Shown here one piece after another: positions 21,047 to 38,959 of a stretch of DNA of 64,000 nucleotides. Location of the stretch: the IMG/VR virus record IMGVR_UViG_3300038465_000091, positions 159,507 through 223,506 of that record. One strand, 5' to 3'. Made by a program: the position numbers and the translations under genes. Numbering within the stretch: position 1 is the stretch's first letter; each line of letters begins with the position of its first letter. The notes below the pieces were generated by a model. It saw only the letters and a list, made by a program, of their open reading frames with translations, did not search any database and had not been told where the DNA came from.

Positions 21047-24000
21047 ATGAAGCTGGACGCCACACAAGCGGCGGCTGCCAAGCTTTCCCACCTAATCGAG
21101 CCCGGGCGAACCGTCTATTCCACAGACGGCCACGCCTATAGGGTCTTGTCAAAGATCGCCGCTGGCGGCTCCTTGAGCTTCCGACTTGCGAACCTTCAGG
21201 GACAGCCGGTTCCAATCCCCGCAGACTTCTCCCCGATTGACGGGGCTCGGATGCGTTTCGCGTCCTTCCTGAAGTTCGCATTCAACAAAGACCTCACTGC
21301 GATTGTCAACTCACTGATTGAACAGGCGGGGCTCCCCACTGACCCAGCGATGAACTGGGCTGGGTGGTTTCAAAAGGTCTATGGCGAAATCCTAGCATCT
21401 GTTACCCCCAACTTTGATCTCCAAGACGAGATCATGTACAACACCGTCATTAAGCTCCTGATGATGCGTAAGGACAAGGACGGAAAAACACTTCTGGAAA
21501 ACGCTGCCGACAAAATTTCAGGTTTGTCCAGCGGCATTAACAAGATAAAGCGTCAACTTCGTGATCCGAACTTGACTCCAGACGAAAAGAAGACGCTAGA
21601 GAATCGACTCCACTGGCAGGAAAAAGTTAAGGCTGATCCTGTGGAGAAACAAGTCAGCAGCCTCCTGAAGAAAACTTTCGAGTATTACGCACGACATCAT
21701 GCTCGTGTGGATGCGAAAAATTACGCCTATTCGGTGCATACCCCCAGCCATCGCCTCGAAACGGAAAATATCGAAGACGTTGCTATCGAACAACCCACAC
21801 CATCTGGAGAGGGAACGTATAATATCCTTGATACCGAGGAACACGGCGTGGCTCCGGGCGTCGGACTGGGCGAGTCCGAACGCGACATCATGCAGTTCAT
21901 CGATCAATTCCAAGAGTGGGTGAGGGGCAAGGAGACCCCGAAATCCGCTCCTAACTATGCCGAATTGCTCAGGATTTACTGGGATCAGGCACAGCGAATT
22001 GACGATGTTAAGATCAGCGATCTGACTCAAGAGTGGATTCGCCGCACAGGTTTGAGCTTTGACTCCCTGAAGCAGTATCGGGATAAGCTCGGCATCCTGA
22101 TTCGAGATTTCGTCTACGAGAACAAAGTCCAACTGGGCAACTCCTACAAGTTCGTGGACTTGCTAAAGCACATGTTCCCGCCGCCAAAGCAAAAAGCACG
22201 TCCCGCCAAGGCTTCGTCCGACCACCATCACGACCGAACCGAATGCAGAAAGTGCGGCAATGTCCAGACTTGCCGTTGCCCTGCGACCAAGGTCACGTCC
22301 TATGTGGCTTCCTGCGACAACTGCAAGACGGCGGATGGTTTGGAAGCACGAGTGCTTGATCCGAACTGTCCTGAATACAAAAAATACGCCGATGATTTGA
22401 TCCGTCGCTTCGGTCAGACATCGCAGGTCTCCGAGATGCTGGGACAATTCGAAGATGAGCATTTCCCCACTTGTGTACACTGCCAGCAATACAATCAGGA
22501 TTGGCGGGCAGGTAAGGTATCAGCGGCAAAACCCAAGTGCCCCCATTGTGGCTCTGACGATTACGGCTTGATGCCCACGGACTTCGAGACCGCCAAGTGC
22601 AATGGTTGCGGCAAGAACTGGAATCATGGCATCGTCAAGGGTATCAATGATCCGAAGGAAGCTGCTCGCACGGCGGATGATGAAGGAGGGGGTAAAACGT
22701 GCGAAAATTGTGGGAGTTATTACGGTGGGTATACATGTCTTAATTGTGGGCGAAAAAAGAAGCTGGAAGAAGAGGTAGATCGTACCAGCAAGGAACTCAA
22801 GAAGTTCCCCAAGGGACCAACAGGCATGACGCCCGACGATGTGAAGGCTACTCCCGAATGGCAGGCGGCTAAACGTAATTACGGTCAAGCCTTCGCCAAG
22901 CTGCGAGAGTTCAATTCCAAAAAGTGTGCTGCCGATGATCCGACTCGTGACACCCTTGACGAGACGCTGAAGTATGACAACCCAGACAAGGACACCAAGG
23001 GGTTCCACGACCCCGCCGACCTCGGTCAATGCGCCTGTGAGTGGGATGAATGTCCGCTGGGTCACCAAGCGGGTGGGTGCCAGAATCCCGCAGCCCACAT
23101 GCTTGAAATCTATGGATACAAAACCCGCTACTGCCAGCCATGCACCGACGCAACTATCGAGTACATCCGATTGGAACAAGGCACTGGCGATCCCGATGAC
23201 ACGGTTAAGATTCTGTCCTCCGCACATACTGCTGGTGCCCCGTACTGCGACGGTTGTGATCGTCTGAAGGCAAACTGCATCTGCGAAGGCTGCGAGTGCC
23301 CAGAAAATAAAAACGCAGGCAAGTGGGGCGATAAAATCAAGAAGATGGAAGCTCGACGTGGCGAGTTCATCGAGAAAACTCTTAAGAATGCCGTAGGGCC
23401 AACGGAAGAGGATGATCTTGAGATGGCTAGGCGTGGTCCGATTCAATACGAGGAACTACCCGAAATGGAAACCCGAATTCGCCCACGAGAAGAACAGTCG
23501 AAATTTCCGACTCCTCGACCTACTACACGGCGTAAGGAGGGGATGCTCGGTCATGATTTTGTGGATGCCGATCAGCAAGCGATTCGCCCCGACATTACGC
23601 CGGGTGACACTGGGCGCTTACCTCATGGACGCACGCAGGGATCAGTTAAAGAATCTGCGGAACTTGCTGGTCGCGGCGGGGATAAAGATGACGTGCGCGG
23701 TGCGGGCGATCTGTGGCGTGAAGAGTTTTACCAAAGCGGCAATGCGCCCCCAAAGATTGCGACATCAGGTAAATGGAAAGTTCTTCTGCGGGATTCCAAG
23801 GGGAATCAGCGTGAGCAGGAGGTTTCAGGCGTAAATTACGGCTCTGCCGAACGTGCTGTGAGAAAATATATGAAGAATGGTGAAAGGGTTGTGTCGATGA
23901 CTATCGCAAGCAAGACGGCTGCCCCCGCTCCTGCGGCACCCGCACAGGCACAAGCACCAGCGCCCGCCCCAGCACCAGCAGCCACTCCCGCCCCTCCAGC

Positions 24001-26950
24001 GCAAGCGCCAAGCGCGAACACGGTAGTTGCCCCACCGCCCGGAACGCCGATTGCTCTTCCCTCGGGACAAGGAGAAGATACACCGGAAAAAAGAACAGTT
24101 CCGCCAGAAATCCCGAACAGGAAGTACCACATGACAAGTAAAAATTCCGCACTTAAAACCGAACAGAATACGCCAGAGATGGAAGCTCAGGTAGCTCAAC
24201 TGGCACAAACGAACCCGCTCACGGAGATTCACGAGAACTGCAACCCGTACTTCGAGCACGGGCAATGGTGGGTTGTCTGCGGGCCGTGCGGAGCCACTTG
24301 GTCGGTCGTTGATGTGGGTCAGTTCATCGGAGATGAGGGCGACATCGACCTTGAAGAGATTGATAACGGTGACGGTTCTTGTGCGGAGAATTTCCACGAG
24401 TCTGCCGATCACAGCAGCCCACGTCAGGGCTTCATCTATCAGGCGGAAATGTGGTGCCCGACTTGTGCGAAGGAGATCGCCGCCGACATTCAGAAGAACT
24501 ACCCTAAGCAGGTCCCCGCCGATCCAACGGATGAGTATTCTTATGATTCCGACAGCTACCCGAAGGGACCGTTCTTCGAGGAAGAATCAGACGCTCCTGA
24601 GCACTGCGCGGGCTGCCACATTTTCCTTGAGAACCCTCTGACCACGCATGGTCAGGAGTACATGCAGTCGATGGTTGACGAAGCTCTGGCGAAGGGACGC
24701 GGCGAAGAGCCGCACATCAAGGAATGGATGGACTTTTACGGCTATCATCCTGACACTGAGGGAGCCGAAGACGAACATGAGGCGTCCGCCGCTTCCGACA
24801 GAATCAATGCGATGCCGCAGCGTGGCAAGCCAAAGACTCCCGAAGAGTTGGGGCTGGTTGAGAAATCCGATACGGAACTCCGTCTTGAGGGGATTCCTCC
24901 GCGTCCTAAGAAAACCGCCGATGGCGCTTCGTTGCTTGAACCAGAAGTTAGCTTCGAAGATAAACCAGACCCCTTGCTCGACAACAGTAATAATTTGCAA
25001 AACTACAGCTATGCACCGCAGAAAGACACAACAGATAGTAGGGACACGGCCACGCTGGACGACAACATCGAAATTTTGAAACGTTACGGCTATGCCCTTT
25101 TCAGTGGTGGAAAATCGGGTGGGAAACAATTCTGGAAAAGTCCCATTGGAACTGTAGTTATCATGTCCACCAGCGGTGAGTGGATGTTTGGTGCGGACGG
25201 TACCAGAGGAACGACCAGCACGGATTTAGACAGTAAGCTTTTGAAATACCACCACAAAATGGTCCCAAAAGCGGGGGCGTCCAAAACCGCCGAAATTGAT
25301 ATGGGTCAGCTTGAGAGCGTGCAGGATCGAAAAGATCGCCTGAGCAAGCCCGACAAGAGTCCGATGTACGGCGTGACACTTCTTCGCGAACTTTCAGCCC
25401 CCGGCATTCCAAAGGGTGAAGTGATCGTGTTCGGTTATTACTACCCAGATGGGCAATGGGGCAAGCAGCAGCTTCAATGGTGGACAACGATGGCGAAGAC
25501 CGAGTATGATAGCACCGTCACTCAGGTCAAACGTCGCAGTCGCGGTACGAATCAGGAAAAGTCAACGGCCCTGTACGAGTCGTTGAAAGGACGTGGTACG
25601 GCGGTTGAGCCGGGTACGTCGTCTGACGCTATCATCGAGCAATTCAAGACGCAGAAGGAATCATCCATGGAAAACAAACAGGCTGCAATCGCACAACCCA
25701 CGTCTGGCGAGGACGAAGGCTATTACGTCAAGGTCACCTACACTAAGGGCGGTATTGATCTGAGCCCGACTGAGAATCTTCTAAGGGAAGTCGCCGAGGA
25801 GCAAATGCAGGATGAAAGCGGCAACTCGACTTATGAGTTCGCCCACAACATTGAGCTTGACGACATCTGGGAAATGATGGAGGATTTCTTCACCAATGGC
25901 TGGGAGAAAGTAAATCCCGAGGATATTGGTGCGCTAACTGACGGAGAAATCTTCTCCGATCCCAACGGCAACGTCTACTGGCATGAGCGGTATCAGATCG
26001 AAAGCATGACCGATGAACTGAAGGCAGGCAACACGGTGTTCATGCAGTACGGCGGCAATCTGTTCGATGAGGAAGATGAAGAAACGCCTGCTCCCGATCC
26101 GAACCAGATGAACCTCCCACTCCAGTCTTCCAAGAAGGAAGCCACGGGCGAGATGAGTCAGTCCGAGGCTGATGACCGTGAGGCATGGCCGATGCACCAC
26201 GCTATCGCTGACGCTCTGGGCGGCACGGTCAAGGCTTTTGACCAGTATCAAGGTCCGTACGTTCTTGTGGGCTCTGAGGCTCGCGGACAGGGCACCTATG
26301 CTCCCGCAATCCCGATGAAGGGTACCGTGCGCCTCTGGGTACAGGCGGACGAGGGTAGTGACGGGGCATTCCTGACCGTCTACAACGAAGACAACGATAA
26401 AGTTAGCGAGCCGTTCCATTGGGAAGACATGGAAGGCGCGGTCAATGCCGCCATGAGCGTAATGGGCGATGAGCCCGAGACAATCGAAGCCTCCACCAAG
26501 CAGGCGGAACTTGACATCCCCAAACCGGACAGTTGGGGGTGTACTTGTTCAGATAAAGGAGCACGCGGACAACACAAGTCCAATTGTCCTAAGGCTCCGA
26601 AGCAACGTGGCGAGTACCACGGCGCGAGTAAGCAAGCAGCGCCCGGCGACGGTGGACTACAACGCGACGTGCAGAACCAGTACGAGAACCACCCCCTGAT
26701 CGAAATGCTGTGGGGTTCCCTGAAACGTGACCCAGCGAACAAAGATCGCGTCCAGACGGCATGGGGCACCAAGACGAAGCAGGGTTTGGTGCTCAGTGTA
26801 GCTCGCGCCATGAAGGAAAGCCCCGTCTCGGGTAAAGAAAGCAGTCAGAAATGCAAATGCGGCAAACCGACAGCTAAAGGCGATCACCGCTGCGAGGACT
26901 GCCGCTCAAAACAGCATTCCGAGGCAGAAAAAGCGACTGGCGTAGAATAA
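21047..26950 (+). CDS. Giant mosaic polyprotein 1 (1967 aa), putative virion cargo
   Basis: AAGGAGG RBS; about 390-aa helical N-terminal domain followed by more than 20 short unrelated modules (many CxxC) separated by KTA/KEA/KQA/KES/HES/HEA. Confidence 0.75.
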   Translation: MKLDATQAAAAKLSHLIEPGRTVYSTDGHAYRVLSKIAAGGSLSFRLANLQGQPVPIPADFSPIDGARMRFASFLKFAFNKDLTAIVNSLIEQAGLPTDPAMNWAGWFQKVYGEILASVTPNFDLQDEIMYNTVIKLLMMRKDKDGKTLLENAADKISGLSSGINKIKRQLRDPNLTPDEKKTLENRLHWQEKVKADPVEKQVSSLLKKTFEYYARHHARVDAKNYAYSVHTPSHRLETENIEDVAIEQPTPSGEGTYNILDTEEHGVAPGVGLGESERDIMQFIDQFQEWVRGKETPKSAPNYAELLRIYWDQAQRIDDVKISDLTQEWIRRTGLSFDSLKQYRDKLGILIRDFVYENKVQLGNSYKFVDLLKHMFPPPKQKARPAKASSDHHHDRTECRKCGNVQTCRCPATKVTSYVASCDNCKTADGLEARVLDPNCPEYKKYADDLIRRFGQTSQVSEMLGQFEDEHFPTCVHCQQYNQDWRAGKVSAAKPKCPHCGSDDYGLMPTDFETAKCNGCGKNWNHGIVKGINDPKEAARTADDEGGGKTCENCGSYYGGYTCLNCGRKKKLEEEVDRTSKELKKFPKGPTGMTPDDVKATPEWQAAKRNYGQAFAKLREFNSKKCAADDPTRDTLDETLKYDNPDKDTKGFHDPADLGQCACEWDECPLGHQAGGCQNPAAHMLEIYGYKTRYCQPCTDATIEYIRLEQGTGDPDDTVKILSSAHTAGAPYCDGCDRLKANCICEGCECPENKNAGKWGDKIKKMEARRGEFIEKTLKNAVGPTEEDDLEMARRGPIQYEELPEMETRIRPREEQSKFPTPRPTTRRKEGMLGHDFVDADQQAIRPDITPGDTGRLPHGRTQGSVKESAELAGRGGDKDDVRGAGDLWREEFYQSGNAPPKIATSGKWKVLLRDSKGNQREQEVSGVNYGSAERAVRKYMKNGERVVSMTIASKTAAPAPAAPAQAQAPAPAPAPAATPAPPAQAPSANTVVAPPPGTPIALPSGQGEDTPEKRTVPPEIPNRKYHMTSKNSALKTEQNTPEMEAQVAQLAQTNPLTEIHENCNPYFEHGQWWVVCGPCGATWSVVDVGQFIGDEGDIDLEEIDNGDGSCAENFHESADHSSPRQGFIYQAEMWCPTCAKEIAADIQKNYPKQVPADPTDEYSYDSDSYPKGPFFEEESDAPEHCAGCHIFLENPLTTHGQEYMQSMVDEALAKGRGEEPHIKEWMDFYGYHPDTEGAEDEHEASAASDRINAMPQRGKPKTPEELGLVEKSDTELRLEGIPPRPKKTADGASLLEPEVSFEDKPDPLLDNSNNLQNYSYAPQKDTTDSRDTATLDDNIEILKRYGYALFSGGKSGGKQFWKSPIGTVVIMSTSGEWMFGADGTRGTTSTDLDSKLLKYHHKMVPKAGASKTAEIDMGQLESVQDRKDRLSKPDKSPMYGVTLLRELSAPGIPKGEVIVFGYYYPDGQWGKQQLQWWTTMAKTEYDSTVTQVKRRSRGTNQEKSTALYESLKGRGTAVEPGTSSDAIIEQFKTQKESSMENKQAAIAQPTSGEDEGYYVKVTYTKGGIDLSPTENLLREVAEEQMQDESGNSTYEFAHNIELDDIWEMMEDFFTNGWEKVNPEDIGALTDGEIFSDPNGNVYWHERYQIESMTDELKAGNTVFMQYGGNLFDEEDEETPAPDPNQMNLPLQSSKKEATGEMSQSEADDREAWPMHHAIADALGGTVKAFDQYQGPYVLVGSEARGQGTYAPAIPMKGTVRLWVQADEGSDGAFLTVYNEDNDKVSEPFHWEDMEGAVNAAMSVMGDEPETIEASTKQAELDIPKPDSWGCTCSDKGARGQHKSNCPKAPKQRGEYHGASKQAAPGDGGLQRDVQNQYENHPLIEMLWGSLKRDPANKDRVQTAWGTKTKQGLVLSVARAMKESPVSGKESSQKCKCGKPTAKGDHRCEDCRSKQHSEAEKATGVE

Positions 26951-31647: not shown

Positions 31648-31696
31648 ATAAACCATTGAAAACAAACGAAATAAACCATTGAAAACAAACGAAATA
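31648..31696 (+). repeat. 23-bp tandem duplication ATAAACCATTGAAAACAAACGAA
   Basis: Exact copies at 31648-31670 and 31671-31693. Confidence 0.95.
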
Positions 31697-31746
31697 TAGT
31701 CAAAAATTCCTATCGATTCTGACCCATTTTTGGGTATAATAGACCC
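31678..31746 (+). promoter_or_regulatory. Early promoter cassette, copy 1 (leaderless)
   Basis: ATTGAAAACAAA.AAATATAGT...ATTCCTATCG...TTTTGGG-TATAAT-N6-ATG. Confidence 0.8.
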
Positions 31747-32412
31747 ATGAGCAAGCATGGTTGGGAACGTGGGGAGATTAAGCTGCCGAGCACGGAAGCC
31801 GTTGCCTTTCGTCACGATCTGGTCAACACCCACAATCAGATTCAAGCCCGCCTGTTCGAACGCGCCCAAATCATCTACACCCAACTCAAAGCCGCTGGTA
31901 AGGGCAAGCGGAACTTCGATTTCTACGAGGAATTCACTAAGATCATGCAGGGCGGCGTTTGGCACATCAGCGCCATCGACACGGACGGTTACGACGAACT
32001 GAGCAGCGCCCTGTTCCCCTACGACGCGAAGATCGGTCGCGAACAGCGCAAGCCAAGCGTCCCGAAGAAGAAAGATTTCAAGCAGGCGAAGCTGAGCGCG
32101 AAAGGTCTGCCTGTCGGCGGCGAAGCTGGAATTGAATTCAAGGGCAGTACCGTCCTCTGGGTGGTAGCCGAGAATAACCACAGCGTTGAACGCGCACATG
32201 ACCATGCGATGGGTAAGGCGTTTTTCCGTCGTTTGGCACAGGTAAAGTGGACGAACCGTAGCGGCGGCGAGATTGTCGGCAACGACGAATACAACCGCGA
32301 CAACGAGTCGTCGGGCAGCGGCGGAAACTACGTGACCATGCGGTTCGGTGCGGCTGAGACACAATTCAAAAAATCGTTTGGGCGTAAATTTTGGTCGGAG
32401 CGAATAAACTAA
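31747..32412 (+). CDS. Hypothetical early protein
   Basis: 221-aa ORF; W.V.ENNHSVE.AH...W...SGG...GNDEYN motif. Confidence 0.8.
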   Translation: MSKHGWERGEIKLPSTEAVAFRHDLVNTHNQIQARLFERAQIIYTQLKAAGKGKRNFDFYEEFTKIMQGGVWHISAIDTDGYDELSSALFPYDAKIGREQRKPSVPKKKDFKQAKLSAKGLPVGGEAGIEFKGSTVLWVVAENNHSVERAHDHAMGKAFFRRLAQVKWTNRSGGEIVGNDEYNRDNESSGSGGNYVTMRFGAAETQFKKSFGRKFWSERIN

Positions 32413-32579: not shown

Positions 32580-32836
32580 TGGAACAAGTCATCATCGAAC
32601 ATCGGTTAGGCAAGTGGACCATAACGGTGCACGAAAGCTACAACTCCGTGCCTGCGAAGACGATCACGTTCGCCAACTCCGACCGTGGCTTCCCGAGCAA
32701 GGGGCACGCCATCGGTTACATCAAACGTGTCGCCAACCACACGCCTGACCGCTCCAGCGAGTTCCATATCTACCCCTACACCAACCACGAGAACAAGATT
32801 CGTTGGGACGTGATGATCTGCGACTCTGGCAACTAA
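32579..32836 (+). CDS. Hypothetical protein (85 aa)
   Basis: TAATG-coupled ORF. Confidence 0.7.
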   Translation: MEQVIIEHRLGKWTITVHESYNSVPAKTITFANSDRGFPSKGHAIGYIKRVANHTPDRSSEFHIYPYTNHENKIRWDVMICDSGN

Positions 32837-32914
32837 TTGAAAACAAACCAAATATAGTCCAAAATATTTCAAAATTCCTATCGGTTCCCGTCCAGTTTTG
32901 GGTATAATAGGGAC
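32836..32914 (+). promoter_or_regulatory. Early promoter cassette, copy 2 (leaderless)
   Basis: ATTGAAAACAAACCAAATATAGT...ATTCCTATCG...TTTTGGG-TATAAT(32903-32908)-AGGGAC-ATG. Confidence 0.8.
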
Positions 32915-33172
32915 ATGAACGCTTACAAAACAACGTCCTTACGCGGAGCATCGAGCGTCTCGCAAGACGGTGCTGGTAAACGTCTCACTTCTCAGGATGG
33001 CACCCGTTGGGCGATCAGCCGCAACCAAAAACGTGCCCTTGCCAACCACAAATTCGACGTTGTTGAATGCTGGACATTGAAACAGCGCGTAAATGGCAAG
33101 GTCGAAACTGTCGCTATTCAGCGATGCGAATCGGATGCCCGAGTTTTCTGCGGGTTGTCGGAAGGCAAATAA
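32915..33172 (+). CDS. Hypothetical early protein
   Basis: ATG 6 nt after TATAAT. Confidence 0.7.
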   Translation: MNAYKTTSLRGASSVSQDGAGKRLTSQDGTRWAISRNQKRALANHKFDVVECWTLKQRVNGKVETVAIQRCESDARVFCGLSEGK

Positions 33173-34077: not shown

Positions 34078-34233
34078 ATGATGACCATCGCAGAGAAGAT
34101 TCTACTGGCGGCCAAAATCGCCGAAGCCGTCCAGAGCAAGTACAGCCTCACCACGGGGTCGCAGTTCACCGAGGAGAGCGTTGACACCATGGAACTCACC
34201 TTGACCATCGTTCAAGCGATGGACGGCATCTAA
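34078..34233 (+). CDS. Small hypothetical protein (51 aa)
   Basis: MMTIAEKILLAAKIAEAVQSKY...; not in the ORF track. Confidence 0.55.
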   Translation: MMTIAEKILLAAKIAEAVQSKYSLTTGSQFTEESVDTMELTLTIVQAMDGI

Positions 34234-34238
34234 CGCCC

Positions 34239-34321
34239 GCGAGGAGGACTCGCACCAACGGGACGCGGTAAGCCGTCCTTCCACCCGTAGCGGGGGAGCG
34301 AAAGCTGAGAACCCGCTACGG
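34239..34321 (+). ncRNA. Structured RNA element with a kink-turn
   Basis: Three hairpins. The last has a 10-bp stem (34285-34294/34312-34321), three G-A pairs, a UGA bulge and a GC/GC stem capped by GAAA. Confidence 0.55.
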
Positions 34322-34327
34322 TATATT

Positions 34328-34396
34328 ATTGAAAACAAAGCAAATATAGTGCCCAAATCCTAGCGATTTGAACATCTTTTGGGGTATAATAGGGAC
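34328..34396 (+). promoter_or_regulatory. Early promoter cassette, copy 3 (leaderless)
   Basis: ATTGAAAACAAAGCAAATATAGT...ATCCTAGCG...TTTTGGGG-TATAAT(34385-34390)-AGGGAC-ATG. Confidence 0.8.
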
Positions 34397-34975
34397 ATGA
34401 GCGAACGAGAGTACATAAAGTACCCAAACGAAGTCGTGATGGACACCCCTATTGGTCAAGCGAAGCTGGCGATCACCGACGCCAACCACATCCACATTTC
34501 AGCCGACATTGTGACGATCAGGGGCAAGGAAGTTCGCTGCTCCCTGCATGTCAACGACTATGGGTGCGGCGTCGGATTCGAACCGAGCCGTGAACAGTCC
34601 TGCCCTTCGTCCTCCTACAATTCTCTGTACGCGACCAAGGTGGGTTCGATGGGCAATTCCGCGACCTCCGCGCAGCGTGCGGCGATCATCACCGCGTGGG
34701 TGCCCGCCGTCAATGCTTTCATGGCCGCTCACCCCGAACTTCGCACCGATGCCTCGGAAGCCGACAAAAATAACTCCGCGTTGTGCATCGAGCACGATAT
34801 TGAGAAGCTCGAAAAGCAGATCGCCGAGAAGCGCGAGGAACTCCGCAAAGTGCATATCTCTGGGCGGCAGGCGAGCGGGGTCGTACAGTTTCCGTGCTGC
34901 AAGGCTTACGGTGTGGTCAACAAGAATCACGTCTGCCCCGAGCGGATGACCTTCGACAACGAGGTCATCAGCTAA
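34397..34975 (+). CDS. Hypothetical early protein
   Basis: Starts MSEREYIKY; C-terminal coiled coil and Cys cluster. Confidence 0.7.
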   Translation: MSEREYIKYPNEVVMDTPIGQAKLAITDANHIHISADIVTIRGKEVRCSLHVNDYGCGVGFEPSREQSCPSSSYNSLYATKVGSMGNSATSAQRAAIITAWVPAVNAFMAAHPELRTDASEADKNNSALCIEHDIEKLEKQIAEKREELRKVHISGRQASGVVQFPCCKAYGVVNKNHVCPERMTFDNEVIS

Positions 34976-38929: not shown

Positions 38930-38959
38930 AAAATAAAAACGGGCTCCGAAGAGCCCGTT
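38930..38959 (-). terminator. Intrinsic terminator of the minus-strand fibre operon
   Basis: Minus strand AACGGGCTC-TTCG-GAGCCCGTT-TTTATTTT. Confidence 0.85.

What the first reader, a model, noticed from the sequence alone, without database searches (positions are those of the whole stretch)
34239..34321. Textbook kink-turn in a small intergenic RNA
Seen: a 10-bp helix CCGUAGCGGG/CCCGCUACGG, then G-A, G-A and A-G pairs (34295-34297 with 34311-34309), a 3-nt bulge UGA and a GC/GC stem with a GAAA loop. This matches the standard k-turn consensus including the Kt-7-type 3b,3n A-G pair. It is preceded by hairpins GCGAG-gagga-CUCGC (GGA loop, CsrA-like) and GGACG...CGUCC. There is no U-tract, so it is not a plain terminator. 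Inference: a sRNA or protein sponge, or a riboswitch/ribozyme-like element.
Basis: partly seen in the sequence, partly recalled or inferred. Interest (0 to 1): 0.62.

Follow-up and report, generated by a model that had tools for sequence, protein, structure and literature searches.

The report
Kink-turn-like hairpin beside phage promoter
A stable RNA hairpin in a giant peat-soil phage matches the textbook kink-turn sequence exactly, but it sits at a gene-block boundary, is missing from close relatives, and has no known binding protein nearby, so it is most likely a boundary or stability hairpin and not a new regulatory RNA.

Summary
Window 34285-34321 folds into a 10-bp stem, then G.A/G.A/A.G pairs, a UGA bulge and a 2-bp GC/GC stem with a GAAA loop. 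This is a sequence-perfect Kt-7-type k-turn (-1b:-1n C:G, 3b:3n A:G).

The window comes from a 223.5-kb IMG/VR jumbo-phage record from peat. The hairpin follows the stop of a 51-aa ORF. It abuts a promoter module that has at least 8 copies in the genome and drives leaderless mRNAs.

The element is single-copy, and only three distinct versions exist. The G.A bases, the C stem and the GAAA loop never change, and no compensatory change occurs. One version (L010) loses half the long stem, changes 3n and gains a base.

Close relatives lack the element. More distant relatives have canonical terminators at the same place. One relative carries an 88-nt block identical to the window, with flanks 62-85% identical, which points to lateral exchange.

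The hairpin scores poorly as a plain terminator. I found no Rfam family, no L7Ae-family gene in the phage or in the acidobacterial genomes sampled, and no conserved GGA loop.

My best reading is a boundary or stability stem-loop in a composite stem-loop/promoter cassette. The k-turn plausibly forms, but its function is unproven. Interest is modest.

The parts
34078..34233 (+). Upstream 51-aa ORF (P0003). Its stop codon at 34231-34233 immediately precedes the structured element.
   Evidence: Translation. Homologues P0004/P0005 and in L010, L071, L074, L088, L089. No Pfam or PHROG hit.
34239..34253 (+). Hairpin 1: GCGAG-GAGGA-CUCGC.
   Evidence: The loop is GAUGA in L010 and L017. In L088 a different hairpin occupies the place, with one A-U to G-C change under the alignment consensus but a different single-sequence MFE fold.
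34260..34279 (+). Hairpin 2: GGGACG-CGGUAAGC-CGUCCU.
   Evidence: Identical in L017 and L088, deleted in L010.
34285..34321 (+). Hairpin 3: 10-bp NC stem, Kt-7-type k-turn consensus (3n-1n at 34295-34297; L1-L3 at 34306-34308; 1b-3b at 34309-34311), and a 2-bp C stem with a GAAA loop (34298-34305).
   Evidence: Descriptor scan. Covariance model R1 finds a single copy per genome. Pair counts.
34322..34330 (+). U/A-rich tail UAUAUUAUU (6 of 9 U). It overlaps the start of the promoter module.
   Evidence: Terminator discriminant -17.
34328..34396 (+). Repeated phage promoter module: distal box ATTGAAAACAAAGCAAATATAGT, then AAATCCTAGCGATT, then TTTTGGGGTATAAT (-10 at 34385-34390). The ATG lies 7 nt after the -10, so the mRNA is leaderless by inference.
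   Evidence: At least 8 copies in the genome.
34397..34975 (+). Downstream 192-aa ORF (P0002), function unknown.
   Evidence: Translation. 18 homologues. No Pfam hit.
34253..34340 (+). 88-nt block that is 100% identical to relative L088, with flanks only 62-85% identical. It covers hairpins 2 and 3, the tail and the distal promoter box.
   Evidence: Block-wise global alignment.

Best explanation
The element is a set of stable RNA stem-loops at the 3' end of one early transcription unit, butted against the promoter of the next. It lies in a jumbo phage from peat. It forms a composite stem-loop/promoter cassette of the kind described as PeSL in T4-type phages, and such cassettes are gained, lost and swapped by recombination.

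I infer that it acts on the RNA. The 10-bp GC-rich hairpin 3 would act as a barrier: a leaky terminator or pause for RNA polymerase arriving from upstream, and/or a block to 3'-to-5' exonucleases that protects the upstream message. That would partly insulate the upstream unit from the leaderless downstream gene.

The top of hairpin 3 has a sequence-perfect Kt-7-type k-turn that should kink in Mg2+ without protein. I think the kink probably forms. That it has a specific role, such as a protein platform or a tertiary contact, is not shown.

Shown: the sequence, the fold prediction, the position, the distribution among relatives, the recombination island, and the weak terminator score.

Inferred: transcription of the + strand through the element, the barrier function, and formation of the k-turn.
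For: Position.
- The element lies directly after a stop codon and directly before a promoter module with at least 8 copies. All neighbouring genes are on the + strand.
- In more distant relatives (L072, L076, L095) the same place upstream of the homologous promoter holds a canonical terminator, GGGGCGGGG-UUGAUAG-CCCCGCC followed by UUUAUUU. It is preceded by another hairpin, so the architecture is the same.

Stability.
- Hairpin 3 folds at -24.3 kcal/mol with z = -4.1.

Cassette behaviour.
- Present in the window, L017 and L088. Truncated in L010.
- Absent in L071, L089, L090/L091 and L094.
- Replaced by an 82-aa ORF in L074, L075 and L087.
- The flanking genes differ between carriers.
- 88 nt are 100% identical to L088, with flanks 62-85% identical.
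- Composite terminator/promoter cassettes that mediate such shuffling are described in PMC2839356 and PMC4122927.

k-turn.
- The consensus match is exact. -1b:-1n = C:G and 3b:3n = A:G fit the ion-folding rules (PMC4382518, PMC8191799).
- Every substitution seen in the 17-nt top falls at 3n, L1, L2 or next to 3b.
Against: - Weak as a terminator. The discriminant is -17 here, -31 in L017 and -73 in L010, against +10 to +62 for canonical terminators in this genome and its relatives (I recalled the formula from memory).
- Part of the U-rich tail belongs to the promoter module.
- The only metatranscriptome contig on a 2-kb stretch (34211-34424) runs through the hairpin and the promoter. If it is RNA, it shows read-through.
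- The other promoter copies have no such hairpin, unlike true PeSL repeats.
- A k-turn match this exact is unlikely by chance. That hints at a more specific role than a plain barrier.
Confidence: 0.45

Rival explanations
1. The k-turn is the functional core. Hairpin 3 is a selected Kt-7-type kink that either recruits a k-turn-binding protein from the phage or host, or swings the GAAA loop onto a receptor. That would make a regulatory or scaffold RNA within the read-through transcript.
For: - The consensus match is exact, including the features that govern folding (PMC8191799).
- The chance expectation is low.
- The G.A bases, C stem, GAAA loop and L3 are invariant, while 3n, L1, L2 and the 3b side vary.
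- The 88 nt are perfectly conserved in L088.
- An RNA-library contig covers the element.
Against: - Only three distinct versions exist, with no compensatory change.
- L010 changes 3n to U and inserts a base next to 3b. That breaks the ion-folding rule and allows a plain 8-bp stem instead.
- No PF01248 gene in the phage or in 3 + 41 acidobacterial genomes.
- The element is absent from close relatives.
- It is single-copy in each genome.
- The perfect identity to L088 is better explained by recombination.
- The MFE fold offers a competing A34297-U34306 pair.
Confidence: 0.2
2. The element is a neutral passenger. The roughly 90-nt block is a recombination relic carried between promoter cassettes, the hairpins have no selected role, and the k-turn match is coincidence.
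For: - The distribution is sporadic and the element is dispensable.
- The identity island implies recent transfer, not long-term constraint.
- No covariation in hairpin 3.
- L010 tolerates a 35-nt deletion.
Against: - Three consecutive stable hairpins give z = -2.5 to -4.1.
- The position is analogous to the terminators of relatives.
- The chance of the k-turn pattern is small.
- Substitutions avoid the core bases.
Confidence: 0.2
3. The element works at the DNA level. The 10-bp perfect inverted repeat, 76-112 bp upstream of the start point, is a binding or recombination site for a phage DNA-binding protein that acts on the adjacent promoter.
For: - The palindrome arms are perfect and lie next to the promoter.
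- Sequence identity is preserved, not base pairing.
- The site lies at a recombination boundary.
Against: - L010 lacks half of the left arm.
- The other copies of the same promoter lack the repeat.
- The 17-bp spacer carries its own RNA-type features, a GNRA loop on a 2-bp stem, which a DNA site does not need.
Confidence: 0.1
4. The element is a riboswitch, a ribozyme or a CsrA-type sponge.
For: A GGA sits in the loop of hairpin 1 in the window, and the region is structured.
Against: - No Rfam match at gathering. Only chance-level hits appear at E = 0.02-0.1.
- The GGA loop is not conserved.
- There is a single GGA site.
- There is no regulated downstream leader, because the next gene is leaderless from its own promoter.
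Confidence: 0.03

Closest known systems
Kt-7 of Haloarcula marismortui 23S rRNA (the standard k-turn)
   Same: Same topology: NC helix, then 3n-2n-1n, then a C helix capped by a loop, then a 3-nt bulge, then G.A, A.G and 3b. Same key pairs: -1b:-1n C:G and 3b:3n A:G (PMC8191799). From memory, also 4b:4n C:G, and the core reads GGGGA / GAACC as in Kt-7.
   Different: The C helix is only 2 bp plus GAAA. The setting is a phage intergenic region, not rRNA. No partner protein or tertiary contact is known. Kinking has not been tested.
PeSL composite stem-loop/early-promoter cassettes of T4-type phages (PMC2839356, PMC4122927)
   Same: A stem-loop lies immediately beside a repeated early-type promoter at the borders of small ORFs of unknown function. 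ORF insertions, deletions and swaps occur at these borders among relatives. There is evidence of recombination.
   Different: Here only the promoter is repeated (at least 8 copies) and the stem-loop is single-copy. The promoter sequence is different and the mRNAs are leaderless. The phage lineage is unrelated and the likely host is different.
Intrinsic (rho-independent) terminators
   Same: A GC-rich stem at the end of a transcription unit, followed by a U-rich stretch. Relatives have canonical terminators at the same place.
   Different: The apical region is 17 nt with an inner mini-hairpin, not a 3-8 nt loop. The tail is interrupted (UAUAUUAUU). The discriminant is negative, while true terminators in the same genome score +10 to +62.
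k-turns in bacterial intergenic structured RNAs (drum, HOLDH, RAGATH-18, Actinomyces-1; PMC8191799)
   Same: A k-turn recognised by sequence in an intergenic RNA of unknown function. 3b:3n = A:G, as in three of the four.
   Different: No Rfam match to any of these families. There is no broad conserved family with covariation behind this one.
Box C/D k-turn and k-loop RNAs bound by L7Ae
   Same: Tandem G.A pairs, a 3-nt bulge and a short loop-capped C side. From memory, the crystallised box C/D construct also has a 2-bp C stem with GAAA.
   Different: 3b:3n is A:G, not U.U. There are no C/D box sequences and no guide region. No L7Ae-family gene was found in the phage or in the candidate host group.

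Membership tests
Standard k-turn (Kt-7 type) | A Watson-Crick C helix, a 3-nt bulge, then tandem G.A / A.G pairs opening the NC helix | tested here: met
   Met at sequence level: GC/GC, then UGA, then G34309.A34297 and A34310.G34296, then a 10-bp NC stem.
Standard k-turn (Kt-7 type) | -1b:-1n = C:G, and 3b:3n non-Watson-Crick with 3n = G (the rule for folding in metal ions) | tested here: met
   C34305:G34298 and A34311:G34295. Rules from PMC4382518 and PMC8191799. Kept in L017 and L088. Not kept in L010, where 3n = U and a U is inserted.
Standard k-turn (Kt-7 type) | Conservation of the G.A bases, with covariation of the flanking helices, across homologues | tested here: inconclusive
   The G.A bases are invariant in 3 distinct versions. 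There are 0 compensatory changes in 12 pairs. Diversity is too low to decide.
Standard k-turn (Kt-7 type) | A tightly kinked 3D geometry with A-minor contacts | not testable with these tools
   Needs FRET, gel mobility, probing or crystallography. The MFE fold offers a competing A34297-U34306 pair.
L7Ae/YbxF-bound RNA | An L7Ae-family (PF01248) protein available in the phage or host | tested here: not met
   0 matches in the 223.5-kb phage record. 0 of 3 and 0 of 41 acidobacterial genomes. The positive controls matched. The host assignment is only inferred, and the phage record is about 71% complete.
Intrinsic terminator | A GC-rich stem with a short loop, followed at once by a run of U | tested here: not met
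   The stem fits, but the apical region is 17 nt. The tail has 6 of 9 U. d = -17, against +10 to +62 for canonical terminators.
Intrinsic terminator | Location at the end of a transcription unit | tested here: met
   After a stop codon and before the next promoter. Relatives have canonical terminators at this place.
PeSL-type stem-loop/promoter cassette | A stem-loop adjoining a repeated early promoter, with ORF indels at the cassette borders among relatives | tested here: met
PeSL-type stem-loop/promoter cassette | The whole composite, stem-loop plus promoter, is repeated through the genome | tested here: not met
   The promoter has at least 8 copies, but hairpin 3 is single-copy.
CsrA/RsmA-binding sRNA | Several conserved GGA motifs in hairpin loops | tested here: not met
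   One GGA loop only. It reads GAUGA in L010 and L017. In L088 another hairpin takes its place (UUUGAG loop under the alignment consensus).
Any Rfam family (riboswitch, ribozyme, sRNA, leader) | A score at or above the family's gathering threshold | tested here: not met
   0 matches in the 64-kb window. The best sub-threshold hits are the S15 leader at 20.2 bits (threshold 39.5) and D12-methyl at 20.9 bits (threshold 57).

The most novel reading that the evidence does not exclude
This would be a free-standing Kt-7-type k-turn hairpin that folds without protein and moves laterally between jumbo phages of peat bacteria. The candidate host lineage lacks L7Ae-family proteins. The hairpin would serve as a specific RNA module, for example a docking site for an unknown phage protein or an exonuclease- or polymerase-blocking kink. 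That would be a new biological use of the k-turn and possibly a new class of k-turn binder.
Probability: 0.13. Interest if true: 0.6.

Novelty: new member of a known kind. Interest (0 to 1): 0.3.

Why it matters
If the kink forms and has a role, this would be one of very few k-turns known in a phage transcript. It would also sit in a setting with no L7Ae-type partner, and so point to a new binder or a protein-free role at transcription-unit borders.

If it does not, the locus is still a clear example of stem-loop/promoter cassettes shuffling ORFs in an uncultured jumbo-phage group from peat. It extends the PeSL idea beyond T4-type phages.

Either way, the practical value today is small. There are three sequence versions, no covariation, no partner and no expression map.

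Tried and rejected
- **Rfam.** A gathering-threshold scan of the whole window and a permissive scan of 34100-34500 gave only chance-level hits, the S15 leader and D12-methyl. I dismissed both.
- **tRNA/tmRNA scan.** None found.
- **CsrA-like reading.** Rejected, because the GGA loop is not conserved.
- **L7Ae/YbxF partner.** PF01248 is absent from the phage record and from 44 acidobacterial genomes.
- **A family of k-turn hairpins in the genome.** The descriptor scan shows counts at the level expected by chance, apart from the finding itself.
- **More copies or host counterparts.** Covariance model R1 finds only the orthologous copy in G000, G044 and G045. It finds none in G046 or in 121 genomes of the phylum of a Terriglobia MAG. 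The 455-kb record behind L072 is not held, so it was not searched.
- **More homologues.**
  - The pattern for the apical core gave 2 relatives plus 9 unrelated hits.
  - The pattern for hairpin 2 gave nothing new.
  - The pattern for the stem arms with a free interior gave 3 unrelated GC-rich hits, about the chance level.
  - The metagenome scan anchored on the distal promoter box gave one identical copy (L047), a few other promoter copies, and mostly unrelated sites.
  - All 12 look-ups of contigs encoding homologues of P0002 or P0003 were used. They gave one new carrier (L088) and many non-carriers.
- **Homology of the element to the 82-aa ORF cassette of L074.** None beyond the promoter.
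- **Pfam and PHROG on ten neighbouring ORFs.** Nothing useful.
- **blastn against deposited phages.** No match.
- **A boxB-like reading of the hairpin 1 pentaloop (GAGGA/GAUGA).** Considered and dropped, because L088 has a different hairpin there.
- **Reads.** One RNA-library contig covers 34211-34424. It is a low-depth assembled contig of unknown strand, and DNA carry-over is not excluded. I use it only as a weak hint of read-through.
- **Not used.** Structure prediction, complex prediction and the large representative protein search. No claim here rests on them.

Full report
**1. What is in the sequence**

- CCGUAGCGGG (34285-34294) pairs with CCCGCUACGG (34312-34321).
- Inside the stem, G34295, G34296 and A34297 face A34311, A34310 and G34309.
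- U34306, G34307 and A34308 form a 3-nt bulge.
- G34298-C34299 pairs with G34304-C34305 under a GAAA loop.

In k-turn nomenclature:
- -1b:-1n = C:G
- 1b.1n = G.A
- 2b.2n = A.G
- 3b:3n = A:G
- 4b:4n = C:G

That is the Kt-7 pattern. By the published rules (C:G at -1, 3n = G, 3b:3n not Watson-Crick) a sequence like this folds in Mg2+ alone, in the N3 form (PMC4382518, PMC8191799).

The hairpin alone folds at -24.3 kcal/mol, with z = -4.1. The whole 102-nt region has z = -2.5 on the + strand and -1.6 on the - strand. Hairpin 1 (34239-34253) and hairpin 2 (34260-34279) are also present.

The thermodynamic fold prefers an extra A34297-U34306 pair, which would compete with the kink.

**2. Is it more than chance?**

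I wrote a descriptor for hairpin-type k-turns. It requires an NC stem of at least 5 bp, GA on both sides, a 3-nt bulge, a C stem of at least 2 bp, and a loop of 3-10 nt.
- Over the whole 223.5-kb genome, both strands, it finds 11 hits against 9.4 expected in first-order Markov (dinucleotide-frequency) simulations.
- Only the finding has a stem of 7 bp or more.
- For a stem of 10 bp or more the expectation is 0.12 per genome.

So the genome holds no family of k-turn hairpins. This single case is moderately unlikely by chance, but it was picked post hoc.

**3. Setting**

The window is the last 64 kb of a 223,506-bp IMG/VR virus record, about 71% complete and about 54% GC. It is a jumbo phage. 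The same DNA occurs in peat and permafrost metagenomes from many studies.

The element starts right after the stop codon (34231-34233) of a 51-aa ORF. It ends at a promoter module made of these parts:
- ATTGAAAACAAAnnAAATATAGT
- AAATTCCTATCG
- TTTTGGGTATAATAGGGAC-ATG

This module has at least 8 clear copies on both strands of the genome. In several copies, including the three in this region, an ATG lies 6-7 nt after the -10, so those mRNAs are leaderless by inference. Two further copies lie 1.5 and 2.7 kb upstream on the same strand, with no canonical terminator between them. From this I infer that the + strand of the element is transcribed.

The neighbouring ORFs have no Pfam match and no informative PHROG match.

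**4. Relatives**

Only three distinct versions of hairpin 3 were found.
- **Window version.** Also in L009/L011, L047 and L088.
- **L017.** L2 changes G to A. The hairpin 1 loop reads GAUGA. Two changes lie in the linker and two in the tail.
- **L010/L012.** A 35-nt deletion removes hairpin 2 and the outer half of the 5' arm. 3n changes G to U. L1-L2 change UG to AA. One U is inserted after A2b.

Within the 17-nt top, every change falls at 3n, L1, L2 or beside 3b. The four G/A bases, the C stem, the GAAA loop and L3 never change. That pattern fits a k-turn.

Three points weaken it.
- No pair shows a compensatory change.
- The L010 changes also create two extra ordinary pairs (U-A and G.U), giving a plain 8-bp stem.
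- Under the published rules, the L010 version would no longer fold in ions alone.

The element is single-copy in each phage record. It was not found in 121 sampled genomes of the candidate host phylum.

**5. Distribution**

- **Without the element.** L071, L089, L090/L091 and L094 go straight from the stop codon to the promoter.
- **With a different insert.** L074, L075 and L087 carry an 82-aa ORF at this place.
- **With a canonical terminator.** The more distant L072, L076 and L095 carry GGGGCGGGG-UUGAUAG-CCCCGCC followed by UUUAUUU, preceded by another hairpin, at exactly this position.
- **Carriers differ in their flanks.** L017 has an extra gene before the element and a different gene after the promoter. 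L010 has an extra gene after the promoter.

The window and L088 are 100% identical over 34253-34340 (88 nt). The adjacent coding and promoter blocks are only 62-85% identical. That is a signature of recent lateral exchange, not of base-by-base constraint.

This behaviour matches the composite stem-loop/promoter cassettes (PeSLs) that shuffle ORFs in T4-type phages (PMC2839356, PMC4122927). The difference is that only the promoter is repeated here.

**6. Terminator or not**

The tail is UAUAUUAUU, and part of it belongs to the promoter module. I applied a d'Aubenton-Carafa-type discriminant. I recalled the formula from memory and used ViennaRNA energies.

| Hairpin | Discriminant d |
|---|---|
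| Finding (window) | -17 |
| L017 version | -31 |
| L010 version | -73 |
| Five canonical terminators of this genome and its relatives | +10 to +62 |

The only contig from an RNA library on a 2-kb stretch spans 34211-34424, which runs across the hairpin, the promoter and the start codon. It is a low-depth assembled contig of unknown strand, and DNA carry-over cannot be excluded. If it is RNA, it shows read-through.

So the hairpin is at best a leaky terminator. A role as an RNA-stability or insulating barrier fits equally well.

**7. Partner proteins and known families**

- No Rfam family reaches threshold.
- There are no tRNA-like genes.
- PF01248 (L7Ae, L30e, YbxF) is absent from the phage record. 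It is also absent from 3 + 41 acidobacterial genomes, while the positive controls matched.
- The host link is weak. It rests on habitat and on the 21-nt distal promoter box, which also occurs in Acidobacteriota MAGs.
- The GGA loop of hairpin 1 is not conserved, so the CsrA idea fails.

**8. Verdict**

| Reading | Confidence |
|---|---|
| Boundary or stability stem-loop in a mobile stem-loop/promoter cassette, with a Kt-7-like top of unproven function | 0.45 |
| Selected k-turn platform | 0.20 |
| Neutral passenger | 0.20 |
| DNA-level site | 0.10 |
| Riboswitch, ribozyme or CsrA sponge | 0.03 |

I class the element as a new member of known kinds, with an interest score of about 0.3.

Noticed in passing
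window 34328-34399; also 31678-31750 and 32836-32918; genome copies at G000:C1 near 455, 48417, 52203, 65755 and 130669: A long, strongly conserved phage promoter module has at least 8 copies: ATTGAAAACAAAnnAAATATAGT, then AAATTCCTATCG, then TTTTGGGTATAATAGGG. In several copies an ATG lies 6-7 nt after the -10, which implies leaderless early mRNAs.
   Followed up: partly
window 34329-34349; loci L030-L070 and L077-L083: The 21-nt distal box TTGAAAACAAAGCAAATATAG occurs exactly in 41 metagenome contigs and in Acidobacteriota MAGs (Terriglobia, Blastocatellia). In some it lies just upstream of a TTGAC-type -35 box. About 30 hits form one sediment-metagenome family in which GTTTTCA precedes the box as an inverted repeat. 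It may be a host-type UP element or factor site that the phage copies, and it hints at an acidobacterial host.
   Followed up: partly
window 34253-34340 and 34898-34937, compared with L088: Islands of 100% nucleotide identity (88 nt and 40 nt) sit in a background of 62-85% identity between two phages. This indicates fine-scale mosaic recombination in the early-gene region.
   Followed up: partly
L025:1438-1600 and L017:12470-12900 (same contig, IMGVR_UViG_3300050011_000164): In this relative the homologue of the 51-aa ORF appears frameshifted near its 3' end. An extra ORF is inserted between it and the structured element.
   Followed up: no
window 34239-34253: The hairpin 1 loop GAGGA (GAUGA in two relatives) carries a perfect Shine-Dalgarno-like AGGAGG with no start codon behind it. 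In L017 the ATG variant would open an 8-codon mini-ORF. The pentaloop also resembles GNR(N)A boxB-type loops. L088 conserves none of this.
   Followed up: partly
window 21047-26950: A very large ORF of 1,967 aa lies on the + strand upstream of the early-gene array. I did not examine it.
   Followed up: no
window 38938-38959 (- strand); G000:C1 near 171,450, 141,800 and 43,560: Canonical intrinsic terminators, with a GC stem, a short loop and 7-9 U, occur elsewhere in the same genome. The polymerase that transcribes this phage evidently uses ordinary terminators.
   Followed up: partly
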